From NCBI GenBank assembly GCA_965637545.1, contig OZ281498.1, forward strand, positions 27,652,001 to 27,716,000: a DNA stretch of 64,000 nucleotides, given 5' to 3'. Below, piece by piece: positions 27,952 to 51,191 of this stretch (the stretch's first letter is position 1; each line of letters begins with the position of its first letter). The stretch comes from Phallusia mammillata. Its lineage: Eukaryota. The notes under the pieces were generated by a model. That model was not told the DNA's origin, did not search any database, and saw nothing but the letters and a program-made list of their open reading frames with translations. The translations under genes and the position numbers were made by a program.

Positions 27952-30900
27952 TCATCTTGACCACCACCACTTCTTATTTACCTGCTGAAAATACATACAA
28001 CATTTTTCACCTAATCAAACATCAGTCAAAGTTATGTTAATTCCATGAATATAAGGTTATTGCCAGGCATAGTTTCAGTAGTGGAATTCAAGTTCTGTTA
28101 CAAAAAGTCCATTGACAGTAACCCGTAATGCTAACTGGTTTGCTGATCTCATAAAATTTCGTGAGACCGTTCTATAGAAACGGCTGAATCCCACCACTGC
28201 ATGGTTCATAAACTGTCCTTTTGATCAACCAAACAGGGTAAACATGATAGGTTTGGTGTATAAGAATGATTATGCTGGGTAGTTACAATTACCCTGCTGA
28301 AGATGCACCAAATGAAATGTTGGAAACTCATATGAGTCAAATATAATTGACAGTTTAAGTCAATTCTTATTAAAGTATCTTTTTTGGCCCCAACAAATTA
28401 GTGCTTGCAATCATAATGGCCCAACATTCGTTACGGTAACATGTTGATTGTTTTAGGTGGACCTAATTGTGTAAATTATTGTGTTGTGTCCGAAGTAAAC
28501 AGTAAAATCAAATGAATTGTTTTCTTACCTCGTCATTCAACGAATTGGAGCTCTTGCTTCAGTGAAACAAAAACAATTAGAAATTAAATCATTGTATTTG
28601 AGATCATTTTGGCAAACATTCATCGTGCACAATTAAAAAATCATTACAGTAACTCATAAAAATCATATTTGACCATTATCATTAGCTGCAAAACTTTATT
28701 ACATAAATTGGCTGCCAATTTTTCAAAATTAAGATAATTGTTCAATCTTTTAGGTTTCTGCATTGAAATTATTGTTTGCAAACTACGATATTTATCAAAA
28801 GTGTTATTACCTGGCTATACCTTGTGGGATAAAAAGGAAATCTGTGGGAATGAATTACCTGGCTATATCTTGTGGGATAAAGAGGAAATCTGTGGGAATG
28901 AATTGTTTCAGCTCTGTGTGGTTTTTAACATTCTTGGTTTTCTTAAAAACCTTTCGGCTGCAAAAAAGGTTTGTTTTTAGAAAAACTGTCAACCGGATAT
29001 CGAAGTGATAAACAGAATAAATGCAACTGTACATGGGTATAACTTGTTTAAACTTTTAAGTTTATAGAGTCGCCTACCTGTAAAGGACATCGAAACGTCG
29101 GAATAAAAATACATTTGCCCGAAGAGCTCTATAAACTTGACATTATGCCTGGCAGCAATAGCTTATGTATTGTTTAAACTTTATGACAAAGTTATTTGAT
29201 TTTTTGACAAAGCTTGTCTTGTGATGATGCTTGGGAAAATTACTGACACCCACCAGATGATTGTTTATGGAAAGTGAGTTTCAATTCGTATTCCATTACT
29301 ATTTGTTACCATTAGAGCTATTACATTGCTGTGACCAGTTTGAATTGCGATAATACTAAATCACAACTACCACACAAGCAAAGGTGTATGCTTTAAAATG
29401 ACTATTTAAAGTAGCATGTACAAACTACGTTACAAGAACAATAGCAGTTTGACTTAATGTAAAATCCACTTTCTTTGTTTATATATAAGAATTGTTTCGT
29501 TTACCTTAGAAACATTCTTGTCAGGCCAGTGAGTGTTTTGAAGTAAAACGAAGACTGAACGACGTAAAATCCCTTTAAATTCTTGCGCAGATGATACGGA
29601 ACCTGCAGATGAGACTTCTTCAGCCAGGATGTGCTGGGAAAATGATTTTTCGACACTGACCCGTTGAAAAACACAACCACGTAATCCTGATGTTGTACGA
29701 GAAGTTCCAACGTTGAAACCAGGTACCTTAAATATTACAACAATGTTTCTAAGCAGATCTTTCACAATACAGTACACCTCCGTGAAACAGCATACGCTTA
29801 ATTTGCATCTTTGCCTAATTTGAAAAAAACATAACTTGAGGTACAAATGATTTGTACTGTGGTGGGGCTATAACTAATCAACATCAGCTAATCCAGATCT
29901 TCACTAATTGCTTGTTTTTATTGGGTTCGGATTAAATGAGCTTCAAATATTCTATTGTGTTGTCAATAATAACTAGAAGGGTGGCTTAGCACATTTTACT
30001 ATAGCATATACACTACAACCTATTCTGCAAACTGTAATATATTCTCTATATTTATTTATATTGGGTCCCATATTAGCCAACATTTTTTATAATCTTGATT
30101 TGTTTCTGCAGGCAGAAACTCATGGGTCCCCAAAACCGCAAAGTTGTAAACAGACAACCATAAGAAACGGTGCTATAAAGTCAAACACAGTGATTGGTAG
30201 TGTTCCTAAAAAAAAAGTTATGTAAAGTACAAACTGTCTAAATCTCATGCAATTGAGACATTGTTATAAGTTTGTGTGCCTAAATAGCATAAAACACTGA
30301 CATCTCAAAATGGCATATTACACAAACTGTCAAAATGTATTGTTGATTAATTCACCCATTTTGGGGGGTTGGTAGGGTAAATAATAGGGCTGCAGGGTGA
30401 AACACAATATTCGACAGCTACAAATGCCAAATTCATAAAACTATCAAAAATTCATCCAAATCGGACGTTTTTTAAAAAATAGGTGACTTAAGCAGTAAAT
30501 ATTGGGCTACATGGTGAAACACAATAATCGACGCCCTAAAATGGCATAATGAAGAAACTGTCCAAATTTCATCCAAATCAGACATTGTTTAAAAAATCAC
30601 CCATTTTAGGGGTCTACTGGGGTAAATATTGGGGCTACAGTGTAAAACACAACAAACGATGCCCTAAAATGGCACAATGAACAAACTGTCCAAATTTCAT
30701 CCAATTCGGACGATGTTCAAAATTTACCCATTTTAGGGGGCTAGTGGGGTAAACACTGGGGCTATCGAGTCAAACAAAACAAATGGCACATCTACATAAT
30801 TATATCTACCATCTGTGAAAATTTCATCCAAATCCATCAAACATTTCAAGGCAAAACGAGGTGGACAAACTTTGGGGAGAAGAAAAAAAAAGAAAAGAAA

Positions 30901-33900
30901 AGAAAACAAATCGAGTAAAATCAATATGTGTCCCCTTCAGGGAAGGGGACCCATAATAAGTTTTACTCACAGAAAGAGATTGTCCATCACCCAAATGTAG
31001 TTGGGAACACTAGAGTCAGGAAGATATCGACCAAATATTTCCACGATAGCTTGCTTTTCCTTGTAAAATCCTGTTAAAACATGAAGTATTGTACAAGTAT
31101 TGTAGGCTTTACTAATTTAGGATGATTAGCTCAAATGTTTAAACTAGTGATTAATATTGTGCTGCTACAGTTTTTACTACCAAACAAAATGACTCCTCTG
31201 TAAAAATAGTTACATAGTTTATACTTCAGTGTTAAGGTTAATGACACGGTCACACAGAGTTACATTCTACCTCCATGGGAGATGACTCGTTTGTAATTCT
31301 GAATTGCTCTCCCGTCAATCCTGTAGTCTTCGTTTCCAATAACAACATTTTCCCAAACAGGATCTTCCTTCATTGTTGCAGGAATCGTGGGAAGCAAGAT
31401 TTCTGGGTCTGTTTTCTCACCATTGCTGGAAGCTGCAGAGTAACATGGGACATTACAATGTTGAAAGAATGAAGAAGTTACACAAACTAACCTGCTGCTG
31501 AAGAACTGTTTGAACCGATGCTTGGTGCAGATGGTCCATCAACTGAAACAAAAAAGGACGAGAAGGAACTGATACGAGTGTGTAATAATTTTCTTAGTTT
31601 AATAAATTGACTTAAACCATGGACAGTAATAGATGCCTTAAAAACATCTTATAATGCATTACATCTAATTCTGGAACTAGCAATAACTAAAACCCATTTT
31701 CATCGAAAACAGAATTTATTGTTTTTACCAATATACTCGTAAATAAATACAGAAACTTTGAACTGTTAAAATATTAACAGGCTATTGCAACATGCCAATT
31801 TTTTTTAATTGTGTTGTTATGTTGTATCACCATGCTACACAACAATTTTATAAACTGTACCTTGTGTTTCCTGTGTAGGGGTTTGAACATTAATGTCATC
31901 GAGAGCAATTGAGAGGACCAGAGATGATGGAGGAACAATTGATCTTCGTCGTAAAGAGGAAGTTGGTGAGACCGTCTCGTTTGTTGCATCCCGGTCATCT
32001 GCGTCGTTCTTTAGATCAATGCTCACCAACTCGGCCTTGGCTGAAATCCAAAGGCAATTTTGTTTTTAGTTTATTCATTTATGCGACCTGTTTATTCACA
32101 AACAGAGGAATCTAAACAGTTGCACAAATAATTAAATTATGCTATAATCCATATCATTTTTTTAACAAATGGATTTCTGTATTGGATTCTTCTGTATTTT
32201 TTCTATTCTGAATTTCTTCCTAACATGGTAAAATTAGTCTGGGTAAAATTATAGTTCGTACAATTTTATTTCCAGCAAACATGGTCATACCTGCGTTGAA
32301 CTGTTCCTGTGTTTCATTTTCATCCTCTGAGGAGTCGGTCAACATATCAATGCTTCCAATAGTGTCGTATCTCACACGATTTGTTTCTCTGAAACCAAAA
32401 CAGGTGAGATATTTAATTGAGTTATATGTTTCTGACTACAGGATTTTAGTTAATAATTATTTTGCTCATCAACTTATTTGGACATAACCAAAGCCAGAAA
32501 TCAGCAAAAGTTTAAAAAGCCAACTCTATAAACTATTCAAATGTCCGTTTAAGCAAAGACATAAATATGACAAGACCAGTGGTGGGGTTCAGCCGGTTCG
32601 CACCGGTTCTATAGAACCGTCTCACGAAATTTTATGAGATCAGCGAACCGGTTAGCATTACTGGTTACTGTCAATGGACTTTTTGTAACAGAACCGCCTA
32701 AAGATGTGACTTTTGTGATAGAAACGGGTGACAAAAAATTTGAATCCCACCACTGGACAAGACCACCATTCATATTCAGCATTTAAGTGTTATTTCACCT
32801 TGTAAATTCTTGTTCTTCTTCTGTGTTTGTTCCAGCCTCATCTGGTTGCAGATGCAATTTCTTCAAAGGTTTTACTGAAACTGGGTCGGCAAAAATCTGA
32901 TCGCCCACATTCAGGTCCTGGAATGAGTTGGTAGGGACACGATATATCTGATCTACATGTTCACTTGTGGCCTCATCTGTCACTTGCACCAGATCAGCTT
33001 GGTCATGCGTCTTGGCATCAGATTCTTCTGTTGCCAGTTCAATTTTGTCAGCAATATCTGTTATCAACTGAGGGTTGTTGTCTATTTCACCAGTGAAAGA
33101 AAAGGGATCAAAATCACCTGCTGCAGTAACGTCAGATTGAACCACATCTTCCAGCTGCTGTTCTGAATTGACATGATTATCAACCAGTACCTCTTGAACC
33201 TCAGTGGTGTCTTGATTTTGTGCACCAGCCTCATCAACATGAACATTGTTTGGAGCATTCAATAGACTTCCCTCGTTGGTTGTGAAATCTTGATTTTGTA
33301 TTTCAACCTCATGAACAGCTCCTTGAGTATAAGGCACACTCTCCTCAACTGTGGTGGAATCTGGTCCTTTCTCACCAAACAGAGATTCATCAATATGACC
33401 TGGAAGAAGATTAACTTCAGTTGTCACTTCAACATCTGACACCTCCTTGAGTGGAACTGTTTCATCAAGTTTAACTGGGATATTTTGTTCTTCAAGTTCT
33501 GCAGCATTTTCTGTTTGTTCTAACACAATTTCCTCGATGCCTGTAGAATGTAGTTCTTGTTCACCAAACAGGGATTCATCAACTACTACTCGTTTATTTT
33601 GTTTGTCGGATTCTGTACAACTTTCATTGTCATCAGGCTGCAAATTTATGGCTTTGTCAACTGGCATTCCATCTTCTGGAACACTTGTTTGTGACTTTAT
33701 ACTGGTCACCATACTCTCTACTTGGTTTGCAGGGGTCAGGCTGTCTATAAGTTTTGTGTCAGTGTTGGGATTTCCATTATTCAGTGCCACATCATCACTA
33801 GCAGGAGCTTCAACCAACACAGCAATGTTTTCCCTTTCCAGCATAAAGTCAGCTATCATTGGTTTGAGTAAATTATTTTCATCCATCAATTTTTCTGCAT

Positions 33901-36900
33901 CTCTGTTTTCCTCTTGGGTAGGTTCAGTGGGTTGAAATGTCATTTCTTCATTGCCAATCATGGGTGCATCAGTATTTAGGGGAAATTCTGAGGCATCTCT
34001 GTCAATACTACTTTCTTTAGCATTGTTTTGCAAATTTGGCACCGGCTCACTGGTAGGGAGATTCACTGGGTCCAACAGGTCTTCAAATTCCAGTGTGTTT
34101 GCAGATATTGTATGTTGTTCATCATAGACTTGCTCTTCCTTGTATGTCTCTGTTTTTGCGGTGATCTCAGTTGATACAGCAGTAACCATTTCTTCCAGAT
34201 GTTTTTCCTCATCATGTGTAACAAGGTCATCTTCGTTCATAGACACTTGGCAGTTTTTAGCTATCTCTGCATCTTCAACATTTTCTTGCTCTTGTACACT
34301 GGTATCCAAAGGTGTTAACACCTCCTCTTTGAAAATGTCATGATGTTCCACATTTTGTGCCGATCCAATACCAAGAACTTCAAATGATTTGCTGTCAAGA
34401 TTAGTATCAATGTCAGGTGAAGAATCCATGTTATTTGTATCATCGATGTTGTTGGGTTTAACATGCACTGGAACTGTAATATATTTTTCTGTTGTTTCTC
34501 CCTCGCCAAAAGACAACAAATTGTTATTATATTGGGAAATGACTTCTTGATTGTGTGTGACATCTGGTGTTTCAGTATCAATGTCATGTTGACCTTGAAG
34601 CATTGGAGTAGGACCTGTTTGGGACTGAGTTGCTGTTTCATCGTCAAACATATTACTAGGCCCTTTGTCTGGAGTTATTGAAGAAACGTTACTGGTTTCA
34701 TCTGTTGTTTGTATTTCGGGCAACATATTGACATCATTTTCTGCATTTGTTACTGGAATAAAATGTTCAAACAACTTGTCACATGGCTTGATTTCACCTG
34801 GCTCTAGCAACTCTACATTCTGACTTTCCTCATGTGAATGGTCAATGGTAGTTGTTCCAACGCTATCTTCTGTCACAGCAAAATCAACATTACGGCTCGG
34901 CTCAAGTGTATGGACATCACCGCTACTTGGTTGGTCACCTTTCTTCACCAAAGAAGTCTCACCATCACCATCGCTTTCCTCATTGGCATGAACAATAGTA
35001 GTTTTTCCAATGCTATTTTCCATCCCGACTAAATCACCATCACTGCTTTCATGAATGGCATCTTGTATTGAATCTCCTTCTAAGTTTTCATTCCGTTCTA
35101 TTGTATTAATTGTCCAATCCGTTAAATCATTATCGGTAACTTCAGCTTTAAGATCTGTCACATTCAATGGTTTTGGTGTCTCCAACATATCTTTATCATT
35201 TTCTGTTGGCACTGAACCTTTATCTTGAATCAAATTTTCTCCAGAACTTACAATAGTGGCTTCATTGAAGAAACCATCATTTTCTTTCTCATCTGTAGTA
35301 CTGGTTGTTTGATCTTCTGAATTTTGTGTCTGGGATGTATAGACATCAATTAGGTCAGTATCAGCGATTTTCGATTCTCCAGATAATATCAGTTGTTCAT
35401 TAGTGGTGCTTGGTTCAGTATATGTGTCTTTCCAGTCCTCATAGTCGCTAGTTTGATCAAGAATGCACCAGGAACCCTCTGTGGTTGTTGGGCTTTCATC
35501 CAAATCCTTTTCTAATTGTGATTTTCCGTCTTCAGGAAAATCTGATTCTAGTGGTTCCTGCAAACTTGAAACACTGTGTGAAGTTGGGTTTGTTGAGAGC
35601 AATGTCTCAATCTCAGCATTACCGGGAGCCTCTGGTGGAGCCAAACATGTGTCTAGTGATTCCTCTATGCCACTGGAATCGAAACCAGCAGATCTTTCTC
35701 CCCATAAGTGGTTATATTGAGTGGCCAGATCATCATCATCATCATCCAGTTCACTATCCATTAGATCTTTCATATTTTCTTCAACCAAATCTTTAATTTC
35801 TTCAAAACTTTTTTCACTTAATCCATCTGACTCCTGATCCTCGTCATTTTCTTCCGGCTCCGACTCCTCCTCAATGACAGGCAGCGTGTTGATTGGCTGC
35901 CCACTTTGCTGGAATTCCTCCCAATCGGAATCAAATGAAACCAACGTCCCAGAGCCCACAACTGATCGCAGATTATTTAAGTTGGTCTGACCAGCAAAAA
36001 GAGATTCCTCAACAAACACCTCATTATTCATTTGCTGTAAGTCATTGTTCAGAGCATTTTCTACTTTCGCTGAGTCATTATCTTCAAGCATGTCATCAGG
36101 CTCCATAAAAACTGTGCTGGGAACAATGTTACTCTGTACATTCACCGGTTCATGTCGCAGGTATGCAGCGTTCAAATCGATTTTTCTCTTTTCGCGAAGT
36201 GGAGCAACAGGTGTGCTTTCGAATGGATTGTCATCGAATTCGAGAGATATCTGACTGATGTTATCTCCAAGTTGCATTTCACCACAATCAGAATCATCCA
36301 AATCAGACACGTTTATCTGATCCGAACCAAACAAACTTCCCTCTTCTGAAGATGATGGCAATCGTTCTTCATCCTCATGAAGTTCAACAGGAGCAGTTTC
36401 CACTTTATTTATGAAGCTGTTCTTCTTATCAGTTTCTGCTTTTGCGACGGCATCGTTGGTTTTAATTATTAGACTATCATCTGTTACATTTGACTCCTCT
36501 GTATTTTGTTGAACAAAACTTCCATTTTCATTTGGTGATTCACTTTTTTCTTCAAGCAGATTTTGCAAACTACTTTTGTTAACAAAAGTTTGATCCGAAT
36601 TCCCTTGCGATCCAGATTCACTTATTCCTTTTAGGTTCATGTTTGTGTCTTGGGTATCAATTAAGACAGATTGATTTTCTGTGTCAAAGCCAAGAGGTAT
36701 TTCAAGGACATTTGTGTCATTCAGAAGGCCAGGATTTATTTGAATATTGAGGCCAATCTGTTCACAGTCCCCAGTCACACTGGCCACATTAAACTCTTCT
36801 TCAATTTCTGCTACGTTTATAGCAATTTTCTTTTTTCCTCTTGGTGGAGCCATTGGCATGTTTTCTGACAGATTCTCAACCAGTTTTGTCGCTTCTTGAT

Positions 36901-39900
36901 TTTCGATGCTGAACATTGCCGTTGCTTCCAAATCATAGTTAATATCAGTTACATGTTTTAGATTGGTGCTGCAAATGCTTGATGATATCTCCTCCTCATC
37001 ATGATTGGGTGTAACATCTAGCAGCATATTTCCTTGTTCCTTGTCTTCCTTTTCCGTGGTGTCCACTTTGGTTTGCTCAATACTTTCAAATTCCAAATCC
37101 TTTAATGTTGCATCTGGCTGCAATTCCTCTGTGGTGAGTGTGTCAGGATGCACGTTGAAATTGTCAAGTGGGAATTGTTCTGCTGAAGATGAAGTTTCTG
37201 TCAGTTCTAAAGTTGGGAAATCAGGTTTCGTCGACATTACAAGGTCAACAAGTTCATTATTCTGTGGAGGATCCATAGGTTTTGTAAATAAGTCTGCTTC
37301 ACCATTCTGATCAACCCCTTCATCGACGACTTTATTGACATCTAATAACTCTTCCTCAAATTTCTCTTTTTTAACAGACTTCTTTTTTCCTCTAGGTGGC
37401 GGTGCAGGATTCCCTTCATCAAGATGTGTGTGCAGTTGTAAAGTTTCAGGTGCAGCAGGACTACTTTTTTCTTCCTCAATGCCTGGGATCAGCACATCTA
37501 CTACATTGGTATTTGTTTGAGGGACTTGATCTTCAGTCCACTTAGTAGTGCTGTAGGGTTGTAGCTCATTTTCAAGGTGACCTTCAGTTAACTCATCCTC
37601 CTGGACAACAGTGTTGTCAGGAATATCAGGCGAAATAAGCAGATTTGCATTAGAATCTGGTTCCTTTGTAGTCATAACAACAGCACTATTATCCTCTATT
37701 TCATTCGGGAAACCAAGCTGTTGACTTGTTGAAAGTTCTAAAGTAGTGAATAGGTTTTGGTCAAAAGACATGTCAACAACCAAAGTAGAATCTGCTGGAG
37801 TTTCAGGCACAGATGTTGATGAACTAATTTCATTGCTACCCCTTGAACTTGTAGTCATTGGTGCAGTTCCAAATGTGTTGTTGTCATGTTCAAGAGAATC
37901 TTGACTTACGTTGTCACCATTTTGCATTTCATCAAATCCGGTGTTCGCCACTTCCAGTTCATTGCCAGGGATTTCTGAATCCACAAGATTCTCACCAGTG
38001 TTTTCTTCTAAAGAAAAAGGGTTCGTTGGCGTATGTGTCTGGAACAAATCTAAATTATAGCTATCTTGTTGTTTCCCAATGTCCATCTCCTGTTTTGAGT
38101 TGGGTTCTGAAGCTTTGTTTTCCACAGAAAGAAGAGAAAATGTCTGAATATCTGCCTGATCATCTGGTGAGGATTGCAACAAATCAATTTCGGTGAGTGT
38201 TTGGACACCATTATTCAGCACATTTGTTTCATTGTCAGGTAACTGTTGAAACATGTCAAGTTCATTTACTGTTTCTGGGTGGGCAATTTCAGTTAACTCA
38301 TCAGAGGGTTTGTTGTCTTGGGCAATTGGTTGTCTCTTCTTTTTTCCTCTTGGAGGAGGAGCAGGATTCATAACTTCAACATCTGGATGCTTCCTTTCAT
38401 CACTGATACCACTTGTGGAGAATATCGACTGATTTTCTAGCAGTTCTTTGATATTAAGCGTCTCATGAAAAATACCCTGACCAGACTTATCACTTGTGGA
38501 CGCTGACTGATTTGTATCCAGATGGCCAATACTCATCTCATGAGATATATCACTTGGTAATTGTTGTGAATCAATTGGCCCTAAATGTAGTGAAGCATCG
38601 CAAAACACAGGTGATGTTCTTTCTTCACTTGTGGACACAAGAGGTGTCGGCTGACTATCAGGCATTGTACTGCTAAATGGGTGTTCCACTTGATCAATGA
38701 GGTCTGTATCAAATTTCTGACTTGGTGCTAAATCTGAATCAGCTTCAAAAAAGTTTAGGCTTTGTTCACCAACATCAGGAATTAGTGTTGGTGCAGCAAC
38801 TTGTTTTGCTGCGTCTGTTGTTTCCCCAATTTCACCCAAAAGGGATAGATTTGCTGGAAGCTGCAAACTATATTCATCCATGTTTAGTTCTTCATGTAAA
38901 TGATTTGTTTGAAGATTCTGTTCGGAGTTTAATGGGGCCGATGCAGTTTCCACTTGGAGTAGTGATGACCACTGGGTGTCACCATGCGCAGGTTCACTGC
39001 CACTACTGGTTTCCGCAACAACACTTTCCTGCAAGTCACCATTTTCAAGTGGAGTGATACCTGAACTGCTTAATACATTGACTGGTTCTCCTAGTTCAGG
39101 TTGGAACAGGTTTTCACTCTTTGACATTGTGGCATCAAGTGGTAAAGAGCTTTCTATAGCTTCTGGCAATGAATCATTTGCAATTGAATTTTCCACTGAT
39201 GTTGTAATATCAACCTCTGTTTCCATTTGGTCATTATCCGGCAAATTAGTATCAATGTCTGCAGTGATCGGCGTATCCTGTTTCAAGTCGCTATTGATTT
39301 GTTCCTGTTCTGGTGGATCCACTGTTAGTTGACTTTCTAATGGTTGGACCACAGTATCAACTTCAGTACATTGATTGCTTGGTTCCATTTGCAATGCACT
39401 TGTTTCTGCATCAGAAGCAACACCTTCAGTAAAATGCATATCCTCATTTTTTATCATGTTTACACCGTCATCATCTGTTGTTGGAATACTTATATTATCC
39501 TCTTTTGCTTTGGTGACAACATCTTCTGCAAGTTCATTTAGGTCTGCATTACCTCCACAATCTTCAGTATTTGCTTCACTTGCATCAAGTTGGGCATCTC
39601 CATCTGGAAGCAAACTTTGACCCCTCAGAGTTTCACTGATTTGTTGATTATCTGGATTTGCTTGTGCTAGCTGCAAGGTGTTTTCATGTTCATGTGGTTC
39701 TTCTTCTATACCATCGCTTTCATTCTTAGCTGGGACATGTTCATGTAAGACCTGAGAGCTGTTAATGTCTTCTTCAAATGTCGGGTTTTGATGTTCTTGT
39801 TTCGAATCTGAAACTTCATTATTTCCATCAGAATCAGACGAACATAATGATTTCACACAGTTTCCCATTTCCACCTCACTTTCTGGTTTTCCCTCCTTTG

Positions 39901-41377
39901 CCTGGTCATCTGACATATTTGTCCAGGACATGTTGTCTTCCATCTCTGATTTGTTTACCTCACCAACAATGTAAACATCATCTACAGATAGCAGTCCATT
40001 GTTTACTTGATTCAAGTCAGGCTCAAACATTCCTTCCTGTCCATCAAATGGAGAATCATTGCTTTCAGTTTGACTCATAACTGGAAATAAATTACTTTTT
40101 GAAGTTTCCGAGCTCTCTACATTATCCACATTGCTCAACAGGTGACCTTTAGTTGACACTGTAACAATAGAATCAGATTCTATTATTGATTCAGGTTTAT
40201 TGACATCACAAAGAGTGGTGATGTCATCATTTCGTTGGGACTCAGCTGGGTGAATATTAACTCTTTCGTCAACAAAACCGATTTCATCCGATGCTCTGGA
40301 CAGTTTACCACCTTCCAATGGACCTGCACTGATTGCGTCGGTTAAATTTATAGAGTTCAATCCATCCTGGCTGTCTTTAGAACTCTCTAATGCCTCACTT
40401 CCATCCATAAGTGATAGAAAATCCAAATTATTGCCACTATGGCCTGTGGTTAAATTGTCGGTCTCTTGATCAACAGTTTTTTGCACTTCTCTGGTTTCAG
40501 TTTTTTCTTGTTCGGAACCAAATATGTCCATGAAATTATCACCACTGATTAAGTTTGTTTTGTTGGTGGTAAATCCATTTTCAGCATCTATTGAATTTGT
40601 GCCACTTTGTGCTGGTTCTTTATGTTCTGCAATTAATTGAAAATCAACTTGGTTTGTGGGTGACATCGGAAAAGCAGAAGTCAACGCAAAATCTAGTCCT
40701 AAGTTATTATCAGGTTTCATGTTATCATCCATGTTTGGCACAGATGTTGAGTCAGCAGTTTTGTTGTTGGCCTGGTTATCTAACATCAACCAATCAAAAT
40801 TAGAAGCAGGCTCAGCATGTGATGGGTTGTGTAAGTTTTCTGTAGTTTCGGCAACATTTTGGGTTGCAAAGAAATCCACTAAATTACTTGTTTCAGATTG
40901 TTGTGCTGCTGTATCAGCTAGTGAAGGCACAATTCCAAATACTGGCTCATTCCGTTCCACAGCTTGCACTTTGGTTGTTGGTGGGTTGTCAAATAAACCT
41001 AGTAAATCTAAAGGCTGATTCTGGGTCTCGTTAACTGGAAAAGCAGCAGAGTTTTCACCTTGAACTTGTGAGGTTGAGGTGATGTCTAACAAACTAAATG
41101 CATCAAATTCTTGCCCTGTACTTGTCGCTCCACTTTCTTGATCATTCCCTAATGATAACAAATCATAATAGTTTTCATTTTGTTGCACAGATTGTCCGCT
41201 AGAATTGAAATCAGTTGTATCCAAAGTGCTGAATATATCCAATACTTCATCCGAGTTTGTTACAATTGCCTCATTTCCCAATTGAACTGGTGTTTGTGTA
41301 GACAAAGTAATCTCGCTTAAAGCTGAAGTGTCATCAGAAGCACCATTGACATCACAATGACCGTAGGGTGATGTCAT
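27952..41377 (-). CDS. Giant acidic low-complexity protein with C-terminal BNIP2-N plus BCH (CRAL-TRIO-like) domain; BMCC1/PRUNE2-C-terminus/caytaxin-like
   Basis: 8.58-kb exon 32799-41378, then small exons encoding WENVVIGNEDYRIDGRAIQNYKRVISHG|GFYKEKQAIVEIFGRYLPDSSVPNYIWVMDNLFL|YLVSTLELLVQHQDYVVVFFNG...SWLKK...LRKNLKGFYVVQSSFYFKTL...|RKVFKKTKNVKNHTELKQFIPTDFLFIPQDI, ending QVNKKWWWSR*; matches the BNIP2/ATCAY/PRUNE2 BCH consensus; splice phases consistent. Confidence 0.88.
28076..28199 (-). mobile_element. hAT MITE family A copy (shortened)
   Basis: cagtagtggaattca ... tgaatcccaccactg; degenerate TSD catagttt / catggttc. Confidence 0.75.
28807..28902. repeat. 48-bp tandem duplication spanning an exon 3' end and splice donor of the BCH gene
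   Basis: ttacctggctata(c/t)cttgtgggataaa(a/g)aggaaatctgtgggaatgaa x2. Confidence 0.9.
29087..29167 (+). mobile_element. Penelope-like remnant (5'-truncated)
   Basis: ggacatcgaaacgtcggaataaaaatacatttgcccgaagagctctataaacttgacattatgcctggcagcaatagcttat; same family as 5728-5905. Confidence 0.6.
30122..30957. mobile_element. Non-autonomous DNA element with internal tandem repeats of about 120 bp and a terminal hairpin (Helentron/HINE-like)
   Basis: Inverted atgggtcccc / ggggacccat; 3-4 copies of ggggtaaatattggggctaca...aaatttcatccaaatc; terminal hairpin tatgtgtccccttc-aggg-aaggggacccata. Confidence 0.55.
32577..32755 (+). mobile_element. hAT MITE family A copy
   Basis: Family A TIRs; perfect 8-bp TSD gacaagac. 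Confidence 0.9.
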
Positions 41378-41664
41378 ACTTTAATTGTGTGCTCATAAAA
41401 ATCTTTATTTGTAGAACTCCATATTTTCCAAAAGCAGTTTTCAATTTACAACTAAACAGTTACTTTATTTCATTATTACCTAACTTTAGCGAGTGTGACA
41501 TCACTACCACTGCTGCAAAACAAAACAGTTTATTTGTGCATGAAGCGCAACAAGCACATTTAGGTGACAACTTGCAGTGAAAATCATTTTGTCGTGAATT
41601 GCACTTTCAGGTGATGTTAAATATTAACCAGCATTGATCAAACAAACAGAGGTGTCGGGTGTTT

Positions 41665-44310
41665 TCAATGATATGTTTGCCACACTCGTTGAACCACTGG
41701 TAAGACTTGCTTCCGTGATGCCTTGCAGTTGTACATTCTAATAAACAAAACAGTTAGATACACACACATGTATATGTTAATAGGTGTATAGTTACTTTAC
41801 TGCAATAACTACACATATATTTACATGCAGTAGTGTATTATAGTAGTTTTTTTCTAAATCAGATCAAATATACCTATAACCTTTCAAATTAATCCTATGT
41901 TTTAAAGCACAACTCAATATAGCGGATAACTCATAAAATATTTACCTTAAAAACACAAAATCCTCTCTGGTAAAAGGCAATTCATCTGCCGACACCACAG
42001 TCACTTCCAACAATTCAGACGCACAGAGTTTTGAAGTAATCTGCATTTGAACAATGGGTTATTTCCAGCACGTCTGTAATTACGTGATTATCTGCAATCC
42101 CTAATTACAGGATTACCTCATCCCTTAATCTTGTATCTGTTGTGTGAATAGTAATTGGCTTGTATGGTTTGTTTGTTCGGTCTCTTGTCGTAGGTAACAG
42201 TGAAATCCATGCTGTGTAATTGTTGGCTTTGCAGAATTCTGAAATTGTTTCCGCGACATTGTCACGTTGGAAAAAAGTGTCGCTTGTTTGGTGAATTGTG
42301 CTAAATAACGACTTGTGTGAATCTTTTTCGAGGTATTTTGGATCCTAAACAGAATATCAAAGTTAATACAGTAATGTTTAAATAAACACAGTGTTATACG
42401 CATGCACCATTTGGGCTTTTTGAAAGGGTATTTTTGTGCCACTTTGGAAGGTAAACCTTACAGTATTTTGCCGAAACCATTCATTTCAACCTTAAACAAA
42501 ATCTCGTTTTTGAAGTGTTTATGTCCAAGAAAATTTTAGCATTAGGAAATTATTTAGGTACACATGACACAAACTTGAAAAGCACATGAAAAGAATTGCC
42601 AGTGATAAAGAATAAACTGTATTTTTTCACTGTTGATGACAATTATTTTGTCAAAGCGTCTGTGTTATAAAATGTCTACATCATCGGCAGTTTTGTTTTT
42701 AGGAAATTATTTGCCCAGAAAGCAACTACATTTTTAATTTATGTGTTGTGTAACTGGTCTGTTAGGTAAGTGGTAATAACACAACTTGTTTTACCTTCAG
42801 CATAATGTCTGTTGTTGTTAGTCCTTCCACATCAAACTTTGCGTTGTTTAGTTGATTATAATATTCAGTAACCTCATCTGCATTTTTCCCAGCTTTCAGT
42901 TTTTCAAAAACCTCAACATCTTCTGGTGTTGTTTTCCCAACGCTTGGATCAAAGTTGCATGTGTCAATTAAAATTGAACCTGAAACGAAGTTCAATAAAG
43001 TTGTAGACGAACAAGAGCACATTAGTTTAAAATAAGAGCATGTAAACATTTAAAGTAATCAATTTTTTCATGCGCGATTACAAAACAAATACATCCCTAA
43101 TATTTGAGCTATAAGTTATATATGTAACAGAATTTAAAGTGTGTACAAACATGTATTCGTAAAAAAGAATGCACATTGCATATTTAACCCAAACATGAAA
43201 ACTGTTGATGTTGTGAAGATGGTATATTTTTGTGGCCAATGCTAAACTTTACAGAGGCACAAGTTTTACTAACTTAAAAGCATCAATTTGATTTCATCTG
43301 GTATCATTGCAGATTCCACATTTTTCACTGTTTCCATGGCAATCAGCGTGGAGCAGGATCCGATGGTTTTAATGTTTTGTGAAATATTGGGTCGGATTTC
43401 GGTGACCACTGGATGGTGATCAACAATTTCAACAACATGAGGTTCAAGAAAAGAGAGTTTCCTGGAACAACACCAACAGTTTAACTTTAATATTAACACT
43501 TGTTGACTATATAGTCAAAGAGTTGAAACCATTGGGAGTTTGAGGTGTAGAAGGAATCATTAATTTAACCAACTCCAACTCCTGAAATCCATCCAGGATG
43601 ATACCCACCTTGGCAAACTGTTGTGATCAACTAACGTCACTTTGAAGTTTTGTTTGAAACTTGTCAAAAATTCCCAATCAACTTCATTTTGGAATAATAA
43701 ACTATCAACGTTAATTCCAATTTTTGCAACCATAAAACTAATTTCTGTGCGGAGTTTTAGATCCTTTCGGCAAATGTTCATCACAGGAATGTAAACAGAT
43801 GATTCTTTACCAACCTAGGTGATAAAGTTTTTTAGTTTTTTTTTTCATGAACTTCTTATCATTGAGAAACACGTTGATTAATACAAATTGGTACATTTGA
43901 TTATTTCACTGTTTTTATGTTATCGTATTTATCCTATTGTGACCTAGTTGTAAGTTTTTTTATTCTACCATTTGTGTGTCTTACAATCAAATATGGCTTA
44001 CAGTAAAGTAAACATGGTTTCAATTTAATGGTACACTCCTGTATGTTTGTTACATTGCCAATAAAATCACAAACCTCACTCACTTTGTATTTAAACCATG
44101 CGAGGGTCAGAGCGCTTACAAATGAATCAAGATCGCACGATTCATTTCCAATCACTAAGTGGACGGATTCTTTCTTCATTCCTGCATTCTGAAATGGAAT
44201 AAAAAAGGTTTGAATGGGGACAAAGAAACACTTTATCCCGAAACTTGTCTACTTACCTTCAGGGCTCTGTAAGAATCATTCGTTTTCGATAAATATTGGT
44301 TTACTTCCAT
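41665..44310 (-). CDS. PRUNE1: Prune homolog, DHH/DHHA2 exopolyphosphatase; 8 exons
   Basis: MEVNQYLSK...|HLVIGNESCDLDSFVSALTLAWF|IPVMNICRKDLKLRTE...VTLVDHNSLP|VVEIVDHHP...IGSCSTLIA|SILIDTCNFD...TTPED...AKFDVEGLTTTDIMLK|DPK...|...FVFLR|MYNCKASRKQVLPVVQRVWQTYH*; metal-binding motifs retained. Confidence 0.88.
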
Positions 44311-45005
44311 TCTAAATTTCTGCTGGCATAAACGAAATAAAGTTGCAATGCGCATTGTTTTGCAAGTTGCAGTAAAAAGTATGATACATTTTTATCTTCT
44401 TAAAACAGATATAAGAAACTCTTTACATAAAATACATTTCCAGCTTCATGTATGCACAAGTTTAAAATCTTTTCATAACATGTTAACTTATCAGCTCTCA
44501 AAGTTACCATATTTAGTTCTCTATCAAACAAGGCAATAAAGGTCCTTCATTAGTGGACCAACATTACTAAGTTGCACAAACAAACAAGTTAAAGCGTTAC
44601 AGAACACATTGCAAAACACAACTGCCTGCTGTGTTTATTTATTGACCGAATCAAACATAAACAACCACATGTGATTACAACGCCCCTGCCACGCCAGCTT
44701 CAACCGTCGCGCGCAAATTAATTCCACTCTTCGTCACAAAACTGCTGTTATAATGGAGGTTTTTTATTGTTGGTCGAAAAATTTACGCTAACAATAAAAT
44801 TGCATCTTGCTTAAATATTTTACAAATACTATTATTTTTCGGAATATTTTTATATGTCAGCTTCACGCATGAATGATTTTGTTCCAACACGGCGACCACG
44901 TCATCGAATCATTGAACCGTGAAGTTACACGAAAGTTGGAAACGTTGAAGAAAACTTTTGAGTTTTTTTGGAAATTTGTTTTAAAGTGTAAGAACGGTAA
45001 TAAAT
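44311..45005. promoter_or_regulatory. Bidirectional promoter between PRUNE and SSR3 with a UPRE-like TGACGTGG (44896-44903, minus strand)
   Basis: Head-to-head ATGs about 695 bp apart; ccacgtca motif about 100 bp upstream of the SSR3 ATG. Confidence 0.55.
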
Positions 45006-47453
45006 ATGGCTCCAAAACAAGCGAACTTCAGCAAAGAAGAAGAATTGCTATTGCAGGACTTTGGACGAAACTTATCAAAGAAATCGTCGGTTATTTTCTA
45101 CGTTCACGCAATTTTCGTTTCAGCAATTCCATTATGTAAGTTTATAAAACACCGATAATTGCTGCAATTCTCGTTAGGTTGATTACTTTTGATTTGAACA
45201 GTTTCTTATTTTCTATGAAGAGAAGTTCATGTTTTAATTTAAAACTGTTGATTTGTATAAACTTTGTAAATATGTAATATGCTTTGAAACTAGGTTTGAA
45301 GTTGTGAAATCTTTTTCAACTTCTGTCCTATTTATTTGCAGGGTTGTTCAACCGAGTACATCAGATGGAGCTGGTTGACAACGCCGTCCTATTTGTTATT
45401 GGAACGCTTGTCAGTGCTTATCTTATTTCTATGGCTTACAAAAACAACAAGTTTGAAATGAAGCACAAGTATGTTGGCATGTCTAATTCTTATTGCAAAA
45501 AAACGTGGTTAAAATGTATGCTATTTTTTGTTTTACTTTGGCCCATATCTACATATTTTCAATGATGGTTTGTTGGCATGTTACATTTTTATTGCAAAAA
45601 GTGGTCATAATCAGGGTTTTTTTAAGGTTTGGTTTGGGTGACCGCTAAGTAGTTTTAAGAGACCGCAAGTGTTTCATTTAAATACCAAAAACTGTAGTTG
45701 TAGTTGCAAGTCCAAATTTTGGGAAACCGCTGGAGAAATTTGGGGGACTGTTTCGGTCCCCCAAAACACCTTAAAAAAAACACTGGTCATAATCACTTTA
45801 TAAATATGTTGTTTTGTGTTTGCTTTCTTTCGTGCCACACCTTCTAACTTAAAACTATGCCCATTTATAAGTTTTGCTTTTACTCTTGTAGTTGTTAAAC
45901 AGTTAACCTAACATGTTTGTTTTCTTTAGGGCTATGCATATTTTTAATGATGGTCTGTGAATTGATAGGGCTTTGTAATTTTACTTTTATATTTGTTAAA
46001 CAGTTAACCTAACATGTTTGTCGATTTTTGAAATGTTGGCATCCAAGTTCGCTTTGTAGAAAAAAAAACTTGGTCTGAAAATGCTGCTACAATAAAGTTT
46101 TTCCGGGACAACAAATATAATTGATATAGCTCAGACTTCGTACTCTTGAATCATTGAACCTTCCAATCCCAAATAAACTTTAAACATGTTTTTTGATTTG
46201 TAGAATTGCCCAGAAGAGGGGTGAAGGTGTTGCTGCTGAAGTTTACAGCAAAACAGCTGAATCAGATTCTTCCAAGAAGATTTCAAAGAAAGAAAAAGAT
46301 GAAAGGTAAAAATGACCAAGATAATATACCCTATTGTTCCCTTTGTATATGCATTTAGCACATGAGATCACAGGCATCTAGGATCAACATTTCCCGCGTT
46401 CTCGCATGCTTGACTCTTAAGTTCACATGCAAAACCAATTTAGAGGTCAAGGACAATTAAATGCCTTTGGTGCAAGATTTCTGCATGCAACCCAAAAAAT
46501 CTGGATGCAAAAAATACTTGCAGCTGCCAAACTCTGCAGACTGTATTATGGCGTGCAAACCCATCTAACACATGGTAACTGATGAACAGCATAATAAGCG
46601 TGATTCATTACGCTTAAATTTTAATGGCTCACTTAAGGGGTCAATGAAGTTAAAGTATGACATTGAACCATAATTCAAATCACAAGCATTTATATGTTTT
46701 TGGCAAATGAAAATAAAAAAAAATGCTGTTGCACCTCTCTGATAAGAATTCGGTCACTGTCTGTGCTGTACAATAACTACATGATGTAATAGGATTAACA
46801 TAAGTTCAATTGTTTTCCTAGAATTTTGTGGAGAAAGAATGAGATTGCTGAAGCCGAGTCGATGCAGCTTGCCGTCTTTTACAGCAACTCCCTCTTCCTG
46901 ATCGTTCTCATTCTCTCATCATTCTACTTTTTCAAGAACTACACTCCCATGTTGTATCCTTTCAGTGTTTATTAAACCACAAATAACAAAAATAGCAGTA
47001 ACAAACAGTGGTGGCATTCAATTTTTTGTCACCCGGTTCTGTTACAAAAGTCATATTTTTCAGCCAGTATTGTTACAAAAAGTCCATTAACAGTAACCAG
47101 TAATGCTAACCGGATCGCTGATCTCATTGTATAGAACCGGTGTGAACAGGCTGAATCCCACCACTAGGTAACAAACATTCATAAGAAACACCTTTGTGGG
47201 TTGTGTTGTTATAAGAAACGTTTCTTGTTGAAAAACAAAACAAATAACACCTAATGCAGTTGGTTTAATAACTCTTTCTGGCTTTTCGAAATCTTTTATA
47301 TCATTTTAGTTTGGTAACTGAAATAACAGTGAATTTAGTCAATTATTCTAGTCCAGAAGTTTCCTTAACAAATACTTCAACAGCAACTACATGGTTTCCA
47401 TGGTTGGATCCAGTGCAGTTACAGCTCTACTCTCAACATCATCAAAGAAATAA
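45006..47453 (+). CDS. SSR3: Translocon-associated protein gamma (TRAP-gamma); 5 exons
   Basis: [43 protein letters not shown]|WLFNRVHQM...[12 protein letters not shown]|IAQKRGEGV...KKEKDER|[26 protein letters not shown]...KNYTPMF|[22 protein letters not shown]. Confidence 0.94.
45612..45785. mobile_element. hAT-type MITE (SSR3 intron 2)
   Basis: TIR cagggtttttttaagg / ccttaaaaaaaacactg; perfect 8-bp TSD gtcataat. Confidence 0.85.
47006..47167 (-). mobile_element. hAT MITE family A copy (SSR3 intron 4)
   Basis: Family A TIRs; 8-bp TSD gtaacaaa. Confidence 0.85.
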
Positions 47454-47557
47454 GAATTTGATACTTTTGTACTTGTTGGTGAAGCAATCATGAACATTTC
47501 GATGGATTTGAGACCAAAAAAGAGCAATAAATTTGACTGAAGCACATAATTGTGGTG

Positions 47558-50500: not shown

Positions 50501-51191
50501 ACCGTCTTGCGAAATTTTATGAGATCAGCAAACCGGTTAGCATTGCTGGTTACCGTCAATGGACTTTTTGTAACAAAACAGCATGAAAAATATGACTTTT
50601 GAGATACAACCGGCTGACAAAAAATTTAAATCCCACCACTGTAACAATGTGTATGTTTTTAAAAATATTGTTTGCGATGAATTTGTTGTTTTAGCGGGTC
50701 TCAAAACACTATTTGTATCATACCTGTTCTTTAATTTCCTCCAGCGTCGAGTTTTCTTCTTCAATCTTTTTCCGTATTTCTTCTTCCTCTCGTGCTTTTT
50801 GCTCCGAAACTTTCTCGGCTTCCGCCGCTTCTAAAAGGGAAGTAAAACAAATTTTAAGTACAAGATTAATTTCTATCAAGAAAAGCTTTCGCAGTAGCAT
50901 CTGCTAAACGTTACTGCTAAATATTTATATTACAAATGGCAGTCTTTGTTTCAAAACAAACTTGAATGCCAAAATAGACAATAGACAATAAACAAAACCG
51001 TATGTAGGAAAGGGTCAACAACTTTGGAAATGTGTTCTGTAGTAGCTTGTAGGGTGTTTGATACTAAAATATTTATACACAAAGCCTTTAAAATTACCTT
51101 GTTTTCGCTTTTCTCTTTCTCTTACAATATGACCTCTTAAAGCTTGTTGCATCATAGGAGAAACTTTTTCTCTCTCAATTATTGCTGGCAT
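47558..51191 (-). CDS. GPS2: G protein pathway suppressor 2 (NCoR/HDAC3 complex subunit); multi-exon
   Basis: MPAIIEREKVSPMMQQALRGHIVRREKRKQ|EAAEAEKVSEQKAREEEEIRKK...STLEEIKEQ|LDKLKDKLSGLREEKHHLFWQFKALLHEESKRK matches the GPS2 N-terminal coiled coil; low-complexity H/S/P-rich downstream exons end ...LMYMKHP* (the 3' exon structure is less certain). Confidence 0.85.
48841..49137. mobile_element. Tc1/mariner (pogo/Tigger-like) MITE
   Basis: TIR ccgtattttacagaccataaggcgca / tgcgctttatggtccgtaaaatacgg flanked by TA on both sides. Confidence 0.85.
49556..49704 (+). mobile_element. hAT MITE family A copy
   Basis: Family A TIRs; perfect 8-bp TSD agcgcaag. Confidence 0.9.
50462..50641 (+). mobile_element. 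hAT MITE family A copy
   Basis: Family A TIRs and internal sequence; no matching TSD recognised. Confidence 0.8.

What the first reader, a model, noticed from the sequence alone, without database searches (positions are those of the whole stretch)
41300..41960. PRUNE and the giant BCH gene: separate operon cistrons that can also splice into a PRUNE2-like fusion
Seen (minus strand): PRUNE exon 8 completes DHHA2 (ASRKQVLP) and stops (TGA 41665-41667). Its 3' UTR has three AATAAA, the last (41404-41409) about 24 nt before an acceptor ttaaAG|t-ATG (41380/41378) that opens the giant exon, with an in-frame TAA just upstream. PRUNE exon 7 ends in phase 2 (tta ag| at about 41946) and the giant exon needs phase 2, so skipping exon 8 joins DHH to the giant exon and BCH in frame. 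Established: vertebrate PRUNE2/BMCC1 is a DHH + giant exon + BCH protein and, as I recall, human PRUNE1 lies directly upstream of the BCH gene BNIPL (verify). Inference: this locus may preserve an ancestral state in which one transcription unit yields a short PRUNE, a trans-spliced BCH protein and possibly a fusion. This would link invertebrate operons to both the vertebrate fused gene and the split pair.
Basis: partly seen in the sequence, partly recalled or inferred. Interest (0 to 1): 0.8.

Follow-up and report, generated by a model that had tools for sequence, protein, structure and literature searches.

The report
Sea-squirt PRUNE2 gene split in two
In the sea squirt Phallusia mammillata, the gene that other animals have as one long PRUNE2-type gene (enzyme domain, giant floppy middle, BCH tail) is cut by a stop codon into two tightly packed neighbouring genes, and I found no sign that they are spliced back into one protein.

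Summary
The sequence observations are correct. On the minus strand, an 8-exon PRUNE gene (377 aa, DHH + DHHA2) stops at TGA 41667-41665. A 287-nt spacer with three AATAAA follows. ATG 41377 then opens an 8.6-kb exon that continues into BCH exons (model: 3164 aa). Exon 7 ends in phase 2, and a join to 41378 would be in frame.

The fusion idea is not supported:
- Spliced RNA contigs from four runs (three studies) all join exon 7 to exon 8, never to 41378.
- The in-frame acceptor is absent in the ascidian Clavelina.
- Skipping exon 8 would delete DHHA2 residues that are invariant in my alignment and that the aligned fused scallop protein keeps.

PRUNE-BCH linkage is real and old. Clavelina has the same split pair. 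A scallop, a limpet and an acorn worm have the DHHA2 end running on, in one open exon, into the long or giant middle region; BCH follows in the same gene model in the scallop and as a same-strand downstream gene in the other two.

An operon is plausible but unproven. One RNA contig spans both genes, and the Ciona-type spliced leader is abundant in this genome, but no leader was seen at this gene. Contig ends place the hand-off nearer 41.46-41.53 kb than 41.38 kb.

Earlier scan notes supplied only the species name.

The parts
41665..44341 (-). PRUNE gene, 8 exons: 44341-44257, 44188-44084, 43814-43609, 43461-43274, 42979-42795, 42344-42117, 42040-41946, 41737 onward. CDS 377 aa, stop TGA 41667-41665.
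   Evidence: Seven GT-AG joints in spliced RNA contigs of 4 runs. Assembled CDS has the same length as, and closely matches, P0121 = UniProt A0A6F9DP44 (98% over exon 5); P0121 carries Pfam DHH + DHHA2.
41665..41737 (-). Coding part of exon 8: the last 24 residues of DHHA2 (RMYNCKASRKQVLPVVQRVWQTYH) plus the stop.
   Evidence: Holds invariant alignment columns N357, R362, K363 and P367.
41378..41664 (-). 287-nt spacer, which is the PRUNE 3' UTR. Three AATAAA (41534-41529, 41469-41464, 41409-41404) and upstream ATGs at 41501, 41473, 41422 and 41396.
   Evidence: PRUNE contigs end at 41535, 41523 and 41489; a giant-exon contig starts at 41457; one contig crosses the whole spacer.
41510..41527 (-). 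Best-looking acceptor in the spacer, TTTTGTTTTGCAG|CAG, 15-20 nt after the first AATAAA. My candidate trans-splice or hand-off site.
   Evidence: pyrimidine tract. Its position fits the contig ends. Use of this site is inferred, not shown.
41378..41383 (-).
   Evidence: No RNA joint uses it. It has no counterpart in Clavelina.
32799..41377 (-). Giant exon, 8579 coding nt from ATG 41377 to the donor AAG|GTGAAA (last exon base 32799, phase 2). Acidic, disordered, with repeated PPRGKKK-type motifs.
   Evidence: Covered by RNA contigs. Only one island (residues 1673-1849) is conserved with Clavelina.
28855..32388 (-). Seven downstream exons: 32388-32291, 32040-31861, 31542-31492, 31432-31271 (BNIP2 motif), 31070-30971, 29726-29505 (CRAL_TRIO_2) and 28957-28855 (stop TAA). 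Full model 3164 aa.
   Evidence: Pfam on exons. tblastn with paralogue P0001. All sites GT-AG and the frame is open. The last 314 residues of the model (which contain the BCH region) are about 40% identical to scallop, shark and abalone relatives. These exon borders are predicted, not read from RNA.

Best explanation
This locus is the ascidian counterpart of the PRUNE2/BMCC1-type gene (DHH-DHHA2 enzyme head, giant disordered exon, BCH tail). It has undergone gene fission.

In other bilaterians the last DHHA2 segment and the giant region are one open exon. In ascidians a stop codon follows the DHHA2 end, then a 0.3-0.5 kb spacer, then a new ATG. Two proteins result: PRUNE (377 aa) and a giant BCH protein (about 3164 aa).

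The spacer is the PRUNE 3' UTR, so the second gene has no intergenic room of its own. Most likely both are transcribed from the PRUNE promoter, which is head-to-head with TRAP-gamma, and are separated by polyadenylation plus spliced-leader trans-splicing, as in Ciona operons. The hand-off probably lies around 41.46-41.53 kb.

Shown: two cistrons, their exon structure, conserved linkage, and the continuous exon in outgroups.
Inferred: the direction of change (fission), co-transcription, trans-splicing and the exact boundary.

An exon-7-to-giant-exon fusion is not part of the normal output.
For: Two cistrons:
- TGA 41667-41665 and ATG 41377, with an in-frame TAA upstream of the ATG.
- All four RNA assemblies splice exon 7 to exon 8.
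- UniProt holds a 377-aa product.
- Clavelina is annotated with separate 374-aa and 2933-aa products 507 nt apart, with the same exon 7 donor and exon 8 start and a similar MT..SP start.

Fission:
- Scallop XP_060083778 carries DHH + DHHA2 + BNIP2 + CRAL_TRIO_2 in one model, with residues 317-800 in one exon.
- Lottia has a 1937-codon open frame that starts in DHHA2, and a BCH gene downstream.
- Ptychodera has a 2182-codon open frame starting in DHHA2, then a further 907 codons, then a BCH gene.
- An unnamed metazoan contig has the PRUNE stop inside a GTGAGT donor and BNIP2 exons 250 nt on.

Operon-like:
- Same strand. One 11.3-kb RNA contig runs through PRUNE exons 1-8, the spacer and the giant exon.
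- AATAAA lies within 60 nt of the giant ATG in both ascidians.
- The 16-nt Ciona SL occurs 3860 times in this genome, against 0 for the reversed control, and caps an ascidian PRUNE transcript.
- Ciona operons typically have no intercistronic DNA (PMC1488885).
- TRAP-gamma lies divergently upstream, as in Clavelina.
Against: - No SL-bearing read or contig was seen at the giant exon. A 16-nt leader would probably be lost from k-mer-built contigs, so this could not be tested.
- A contig across two genes does not prove a single transcript (tool caveat).
- In one run the PRUNE and giant-exon contigs are separate (41535 and 41457), which also fits an internal promoter.
- A 5' end near 41.5 kb would leave four upstream ATGs in the leader.
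- 16 of 18 Ciona operons lack AATAAA near the boundary; this locus has three.
- The direction of change rests on five non-tunicate lineages, and some fused models are automatic annotations. Amphioxus, echinoderms and cnidarians were not sampled.
- A beetle has PRUNE unlinked to BCH.
Confidence: 0.6

Rival explanations
1. One transcription unit yields short PRUNE, an SL-trans-spliced BCH protein starting at 41378, and also a PRUNE2-like fusion made by skipping exon 8. This three-output state is ancestral.
For: - Phase match and an open 3214-codon join.
- AG|T ATG with AATAAA 24 nt upstream.
- Mammalian PRUNE2/BMCC1 does make N-terminal-only, C-terminal-only and full-length products (PMC2655648; PMC3327665).
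Against: - No 41946-to-41378 joint in 4 RNA assemblies from 3 studies, although contigs drop rare forms.
- The giant-exon contig reaches 79 nt upstream of 41378.
- Clavelina has no in-frame stop-free acceptor in its spacer, and its annotation carries no fused product.
- The join would remove the SRK..P segment of DHHA2 that the aligned fused scallop protein retains. From my own knowledge, this segment corresponds to substrate-binding Arg/Lys in family II pyrophosphatases.
- Outgroups show a continuous exon, not an operon.
Confidence: 0.1
2. Two ordinary neighbouring genes. The giant BCH gene has its own promoter or transcription start inside the PRUNE 3' UTR (about 41.46-41.53 kb). The spanning contig is overlap or read-through, with no operon and no trans-splicing.
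For: - In run X4 the PRUNE contig ends at 41535 and the giant-exon contig begins at 41457, with nothing between. In X5 and X17 the PRUNE contigs also stop at 41523 and 41489.
- No SL was seen.
- About half of Ciona genes are not trans-spliced (PMC1488885).
Against: - One run gives a continuous contig.
- There is very little room for a promoter: 287 nt here, and in Clavelina AATAAA lies 58 nt before the ATG.
- A start near 41.5 kb leaves four upstream ATGs.
- The arrangement is conserved across distant ascidians.
Confidence: 0.28

Closest known systems
Vertebrate PRUNE2 / BMCC1 (BNIP-XL)
   Same: Same parts in the same order: DHH-DHHA2 head, very large disordered middle exon, BNIP2 + BCH (CRAL_TRIO_2) tail. 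The mammalian locus also expresses head-only and tail-only products from alternative ends and promoters (PMC2655648, PMC3327665).
   Different: Here head and tail cannot be on one polypeptide without dropping exon 8. A stop codon, a 287-nt spacer and a new ATG separate them, and the only RNA form seen keeps exon 8.
Invertebrate fused 'prune homolog 2-like' genes (Ylistrum balloti XP_060083778; Lottia and Ptychodera loci)
   Same: Orthologous domain set and order. The intron at the exon 6/7 position is shared with the scallop.
   Different: In those species the DHHA2 end runs straight on into the long or giant middle region within one exon. Ascidians have an extra phase-2 intron (intron 7) and a stop after DHHA2.
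Mammalian PRUNE1 - BNIPL neighbour pair
   Same: A split PRUNE and BCH gene pair lying side by side. The order ..MINDY1, PRUNE1, BNIPL, CDC42SE1.. appears in an ordered goat gene list. Adjacency in human is from my memory only.
   Different: There is no giant exon between them. They are ordinary separate genes in a lineage without SL trans-splicing, and the split was probably independent of the ascidian one.
Ciona SL-resolved operons (Satou et al. 2006, PMC1488885)
   Same: Same-strand genes with the upstream 3' end next to the downstream start, and the same 16-nt spliced leader in the genome.
   Different: Trans-splicing of the downstream gene is not shown here. AATAAA is present here, whereas most Ciona operons lack it. 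The boundary is not mapped.

Membership tests
PRUNE (DHH-family phosphoesterase) | DHH domain with the DHH motif | tested here: met
   Pfam DHH 31.5 bits (cut-off 28.1) on P0121. D136 and H137 are invariant in alignment A1.
PRUNE (DHH-family phosphoesterase) | Complete DHHA2 domain | tested here: met
   Pfam DHHA2 43.6 bits, residues 227-371, profile positions 2-125 of 126. Exon 8 supplies the last part.
PRUNE2 / BMCC1 | DHH-DHHA2 and BCH on one polypeptide | tested here: not met
   Stop at 41667-41665. All RNA contigs keep exon 8. The database protein is 377 aa.
PRUNE2 / BMCC1 | Giant disordered central exon followed by BNIP2 + CRAL_TRIO_2 (BCH) at the C-terminus | tested here: met
   2860-codon exon. 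Pfam BNIP2 and CRAL_TRIO_2 on downstream exons. 3164-aa model.
PRUNE2 / BMCC1 | Orthologous position: PRUNE head immediately upstream of the BCH tail on the same strand in other animals | tested here: met
   Clavelina, scallop, Lottia and Ptychodera. Not so in a beetle.
Ascidian SL-resolved operon | Same strand, with little or no DNA between the upstream poly(A) site and the downstream 5' end | tested here: inconclusive
   Only 287 nt from stop to ATG. Contig ends (41535, 41523, 41489 against 41457) suggest abutting ends, but contigs cannot map ends.
Ascidian SL-resolved operon | Downstream cistron carries the spliced leader | not testable with these tools
   Only assembled contigs were available, and no loose ends were reported. 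The SL exists in the genome.
Ascidian SL-resolved operon | A polycistronic precursor exists | tested here: inconclusive
   An 11,259-nt contig in X1 spans both genes with the spacer unspliced. By the tool's own caveat, a contig is not a single molecule.

The most novel reading that the evidence does not exclude
Ascidians cut an ancestral PRUNE2-type giant exon in two with a stop codon and still transcribe both halves together, using spliced-leader trans-splicing to give the second half its own mRNA. This would be gene fission made possible by operon processing. It would be a natural hard-wired version of what mammals do at PRUNE2 with alternative promoters, and a parallel to the PRUNE1|BNIPL split.
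Probability: 0.4. Interest if true: 0.6.

Novelty: new variant of a known kind. Interest (0 to 1): 0.45.

Why it matters
The result ties three facts into one history. These are the fused vertebrate PRUNE2, the side-by-side PRUNE1 and BNIPL genes, and the ascidian pair. All of them look like descendants of one old bilaterian gene with a DHH head, a giant floppy middle and a BCH tail.

In the open literature I could search, I found no paper that mentions PRUNE2, PRUNE1 and BNIPL together.

If co-transcription is confirmed, the ascidian locus would be a clean example of how spliced-leader trans-splicing lets a long gene break into two without either half losing expression.

It also warns that head and tail of PRUNE2 may work as separate proteins. 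That matters for reading PRUNE2/BMCC1 biology in cancer and brain.

Tried and rejected
- Phage-collection DNA search with the finding: irrelevant, no match.
- Word search with the 2860-aa giant ORF: no hit at E<=0.001. The exon is fast-evolving, and the blank says nothing about relatives.
- Pfam on single PRUNE exons, and a DHHA2 search of the window's own genome: no hits, because the domains are split across exons. This was solved by finding the full-length protein P0121.
- Look-up of the abalone short isoform P0076: not on record.
- BLAST of the ascidian giant exons against the scallop linker: nothing significant. The spacer therefore cannot be shown to be former coding sequence.
- Ascidian transcript contigs L009 and L010: neither runs into a giant ORF. 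The upstream 'ORF' on L009 looks like noise.
- A second Ptychodera PRUNE-like copy 1 Mb away is partial and uninformative.
- A same-frame read-through from exon 8 into the giant ORF is rejected: TGA and ATG are 290 nt apart (different frames), and the spacer is full of stops.
- I did not scan metagenome contigs for SL-plus-exon patterns, because Phallusia RNA is unlikely to be in that collection.
- No human sequence was fetched or compared.
Full report
**Organism and setting**

The window comes from the ascidian Phallusia mammillata. An earlier scan note named the species. I confirmed it through two proteins that the databases attribute to that species:
- the BNIP2-like protein P0001, 100% identical to a paralogous locus elsewhere in this genome;
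- 'Protein prune homolog' P0121 = A0A6F9DP44, the same length (377 aa) as my assembled PRUNE and 98% identical over exon 5.

Everything below is on the minus strand.

**Checking the observation**

- Exon 7 ends ...TTA AG| at 41946, in phase 2.
- Exon 8 starts at 41737 and encodes the last 24 residues, including ASRKQVLP.
- The stop is TGA 41667-41665.
- Three AATAAA lie at 41534-41529, 41469-41464 and 41409-41404.
- AG 41380-41379 is followed by T and then ATG 41377, with an in-frame TAA at 41383-41381.
- ATG 41377 opens 2860 codons.
- Joining exon 7 to 41378 keeps the frame open for 3214 codons.

The frame match has a 1-in-3 prior. The AG has a weak pyrimidine tract.

**RNA evidence (one call allowed)**

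I laid four runs from three studies on 39000-44700. They are recorded only as 'RNA?', but their contigs skip seven GT-AG introns, so they are spliced RNA.

- All four runs give the same PRUNE structure: 44341-44257, 44188-44084, 43814-43609, 43461-43274, 42979-42795, 42344-42117, 42040-41946 and 41737 onward.
- All four join 41946 to 41737. None joins 41946 to 41378.
- In X1, a single 11,259-nt contig runs through PRUNE exons 1-8, then unspliced across the spacer and giant exon, and on for about 7.4 kb. That length fits my downstream exon model.
- In X4 the PRUNE contig stops at 41535 and a 9785-nt giant-exon contig starts at 41457.
- PRUNE contigs stop at 41523 in X5 and at 41489 in X17.
- No loose ends were reported. 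A 16-nt leader would probably be lost from contigs built from 31-letter words, so its absence says nothing.
- Contigs also drop rare isoforms, so a low-level fusion is not excluded.

**What the two genes are**

- P0121 (377 aa) has Pfam DHH (residues 29-185) and DHHA2 (227-371) above the curated cut-offs.
- The downstream exons carry BNIP2 and CRAL_TRIO_2.
- I built a full model using the paralogue as guide and by reading splice sites. It has the exons 41377-32799, 32388-32291, 32040-31861, 31542-31492, 31432-31271, 31070-30971, 29726-29505 and 28957-28855.
- All sites are GT-AG, and the product is 3164 aa. Its last 314 residues, which contain the BCH region, are about 40% identical to scallop, shark and abalone relatives. 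These borders are predicted, not read from RNA.

**Other species**

A search with exon 5 alone, followed by look-ups, gave the key comparisons.

- *Clavelina lepadiformis*, a distant ascidian. A 374-aa PRUNE1-like gene is followed on the same strand, 507 nt after its stop, by the ATG of a 2933-aa BNIP2 + CRAL_TRIO_2 product whose first exon is 2580 codons.
  - The exon 7 donor (TTTTTAAG|GTAAAT), the exon 8 start and the MT..SP start are shared with Phallusia.
  - GPS2 and a divergent TRAP-gamma lie upstream in both species.
  - Clavelina has one AATAAA, 58 nt before the ATG.
  - It has no spacer AG that would give an in-frame, stop-free join from exon 7.
- *Ylistrum balloti*, a scallop. XP_060083778 (1650 aa) carries DHH, DHHA2, BNIP2 and CRAL_TRIO_2 in one model. 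The exon that begins at the position of the ascidian exon 6/7 intron covers residues 317-800. The DHHA2 end, with ASRKKVLP, therefore runs straight on into the linker.
- *Lottia gigantea*, a limpet. A 1937-codon open frame begins with the DHHA2 C-terminal piece, and a BCH gene follows.
- *Ptychodera flava*, an acorn worm. A 2182-codon open frame starts inside DHHA2, a further 907-codon frame follows, and then comes a BNIP2 + CRAL_TRIO_2 gene. The annotation splits these into three same-strand genes 350 and 110 bp apart.
- An unnamed metazoan contig. The PRUNE stop lies inside a consensus GTGAGT donor, and BNIP2 exons follow 250 nt downstream.
- A beetle. PRUNE is not next to a BCH gene.

From papers:
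- An ordered goat gene list gives ..MINDY1, PRUNE1, BNIPL, CDC42SE1...
- The human and mouse PRUNE2/BMCC1 loci produce head-only, tail-only and full-length forms.
- Gupta et al. 2012 noted two group-I BCH genes in Ciona, and DHH/DHHA2 on some BNIP-XL proteins.
- No paper in the searchable library holds PRUNE2, PRUNE1 and BNIPL together.

**Interpretation**

The comparison reverses the proposed polarity.

In the scallop, the DHH-DHHA2 head, the middle region and BCH are in one gene model. In Lottia and Ptychodera the DHHA2 end is continuous with a giant open frame, and a BCH gene follows on the same strand. According to the literature, vertebrate PRUNE2 is also fused. The simplest reading is a fused ancestor, with a split in ascidians and a separate split giving PRUNE1|BNIPL.

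In ascidians the old exon now contains an added intron (intron 7), a stop after DHHA2, a spacer and a new start.

The exon-skipping fusion is unlikely to be a real product, for four reasons:
- It is unseen in RNA.
- It is not conserved in Clavelina.
- Clavelina carries no fused product.
- It would remove N357, R362, K363 and P367, which are invariant in alignment A1 and kept by the aligned fused scallop protein.

**How the pair is probably expressed**

- The second gene has essentially no upstream DNA of its own.
- The genome holds 3860 exact copies of the Ciona-type leader, against 0 for the reversed control. The same leader caps an ascidian PRUNE transcript in a metatranscriptome.
- Ciona operons characteristically have the upstream poly(A) site abutting the downstream acceptor.

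I therefore favour co-transcription with trans-splicing, at about 55-60%.

The contig ends fit a hand-off near 41.46-41.53 kb better than one at 41378. That zone follows the first AATAAA, where the best acceptor-like sequence of the spacer sits (TTTTGTTTTGCAG|CAG). Such a 5' end would leave four upstream ATGs, which is a weakness of this placement. An internal promoter remains a serious rival, at about 28%.

**Limits**

- Only assembled contigs were available.
- Amphioxus, echinoderms, cnidarians and vertebrate gene structures were not examined.
- Human PRUNE1-BNIPL adjacency rests on my memory plus the goat list.
- No N stretches occur in the window. No human sequence was fetched.

Noticed in passing
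L001:1303-2382 (G000 contig C4, 20147878-20148252 region): A second BNIP2-family gene in this genome is intronless (359 aa, P0001). It is better conserved than the BCH tail of the giant gene: about 50% identity to vertebrates against about 35-42%. Ciona, Clavelina and Styela have the same short gene. It may be an old retrocopy of a tail-only transcript.
   Followed up: partly
window 32799-41377, minus strand (giant exon residues ~1000-1720): Repeated short motifs sit inside the disordered giant exon. There are three to four copies of (N/M)PxAPPRGKKK and two copies of DN(I/V)SQxSLExDxNxF. The PPRxKK motif and one 180-residue island (residues 1673-1849, E=1e-17) are the only parts shared with Clavelina. 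They look like docking motifs.
   Followed up: partly
window 28800-28895, minus strand: A tandem duplication of about 45 nt lies at the very end of the BCH coding sequence. It repeats the last codons (..IPQDIA) together with the AGGTAAT that holds both a possible donor and the stop.
   Followed up: no
window about 50500-50630, 49590-49740, 32610-32790, 28080-28225, 23100-23295 (minus-strand reading): The same short element recurs at least five times in the window, including the intron just after the giant exon. As an ORF it reads ..[35 protein letters not shown]. It looks like a dispersed MITE- or SINE-like repeat.
   Followed up: no
G000, whole genome: The exact 16-nt spliced-leader sequence occurs 3860 times (0 for the reversed control). 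That is far more than expected for a simple SL RNA gene cluster. The copies are dispersed on all large contigs.
   Followed up: no
window 44348-51000; L004:1-9300: The four-gene order GPS2, TRAP-gamma (opposite strand), PRUNE, giant BCH is conserved between Phallusia and Clavelina. Separately, a GH38 alpha-mannosidase lies just upstream of the PRUNE2-like gene in both Lottia (L007) and the unnamed metazoan contig (L008).
   Followed up: partly
L006:31671-41037: In Ptychodera flava the giant open frame is broken once (about 38216-38317, with a frame change). RefSeq splits the locus into three genes and names the first 'serine-rich adhesin for platelets-like'. This is likely one PRUNE2-like gene, either mis-split or with a sequence error.
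   Followed up: partly
L008:10001-13200: An unidentified metazoan contig from an ENA assembly has an intronless PRUNE body and only a short linker before the BCH exons. It is a compact version of the fused gene, without a giant exon.
   Followed up: partly
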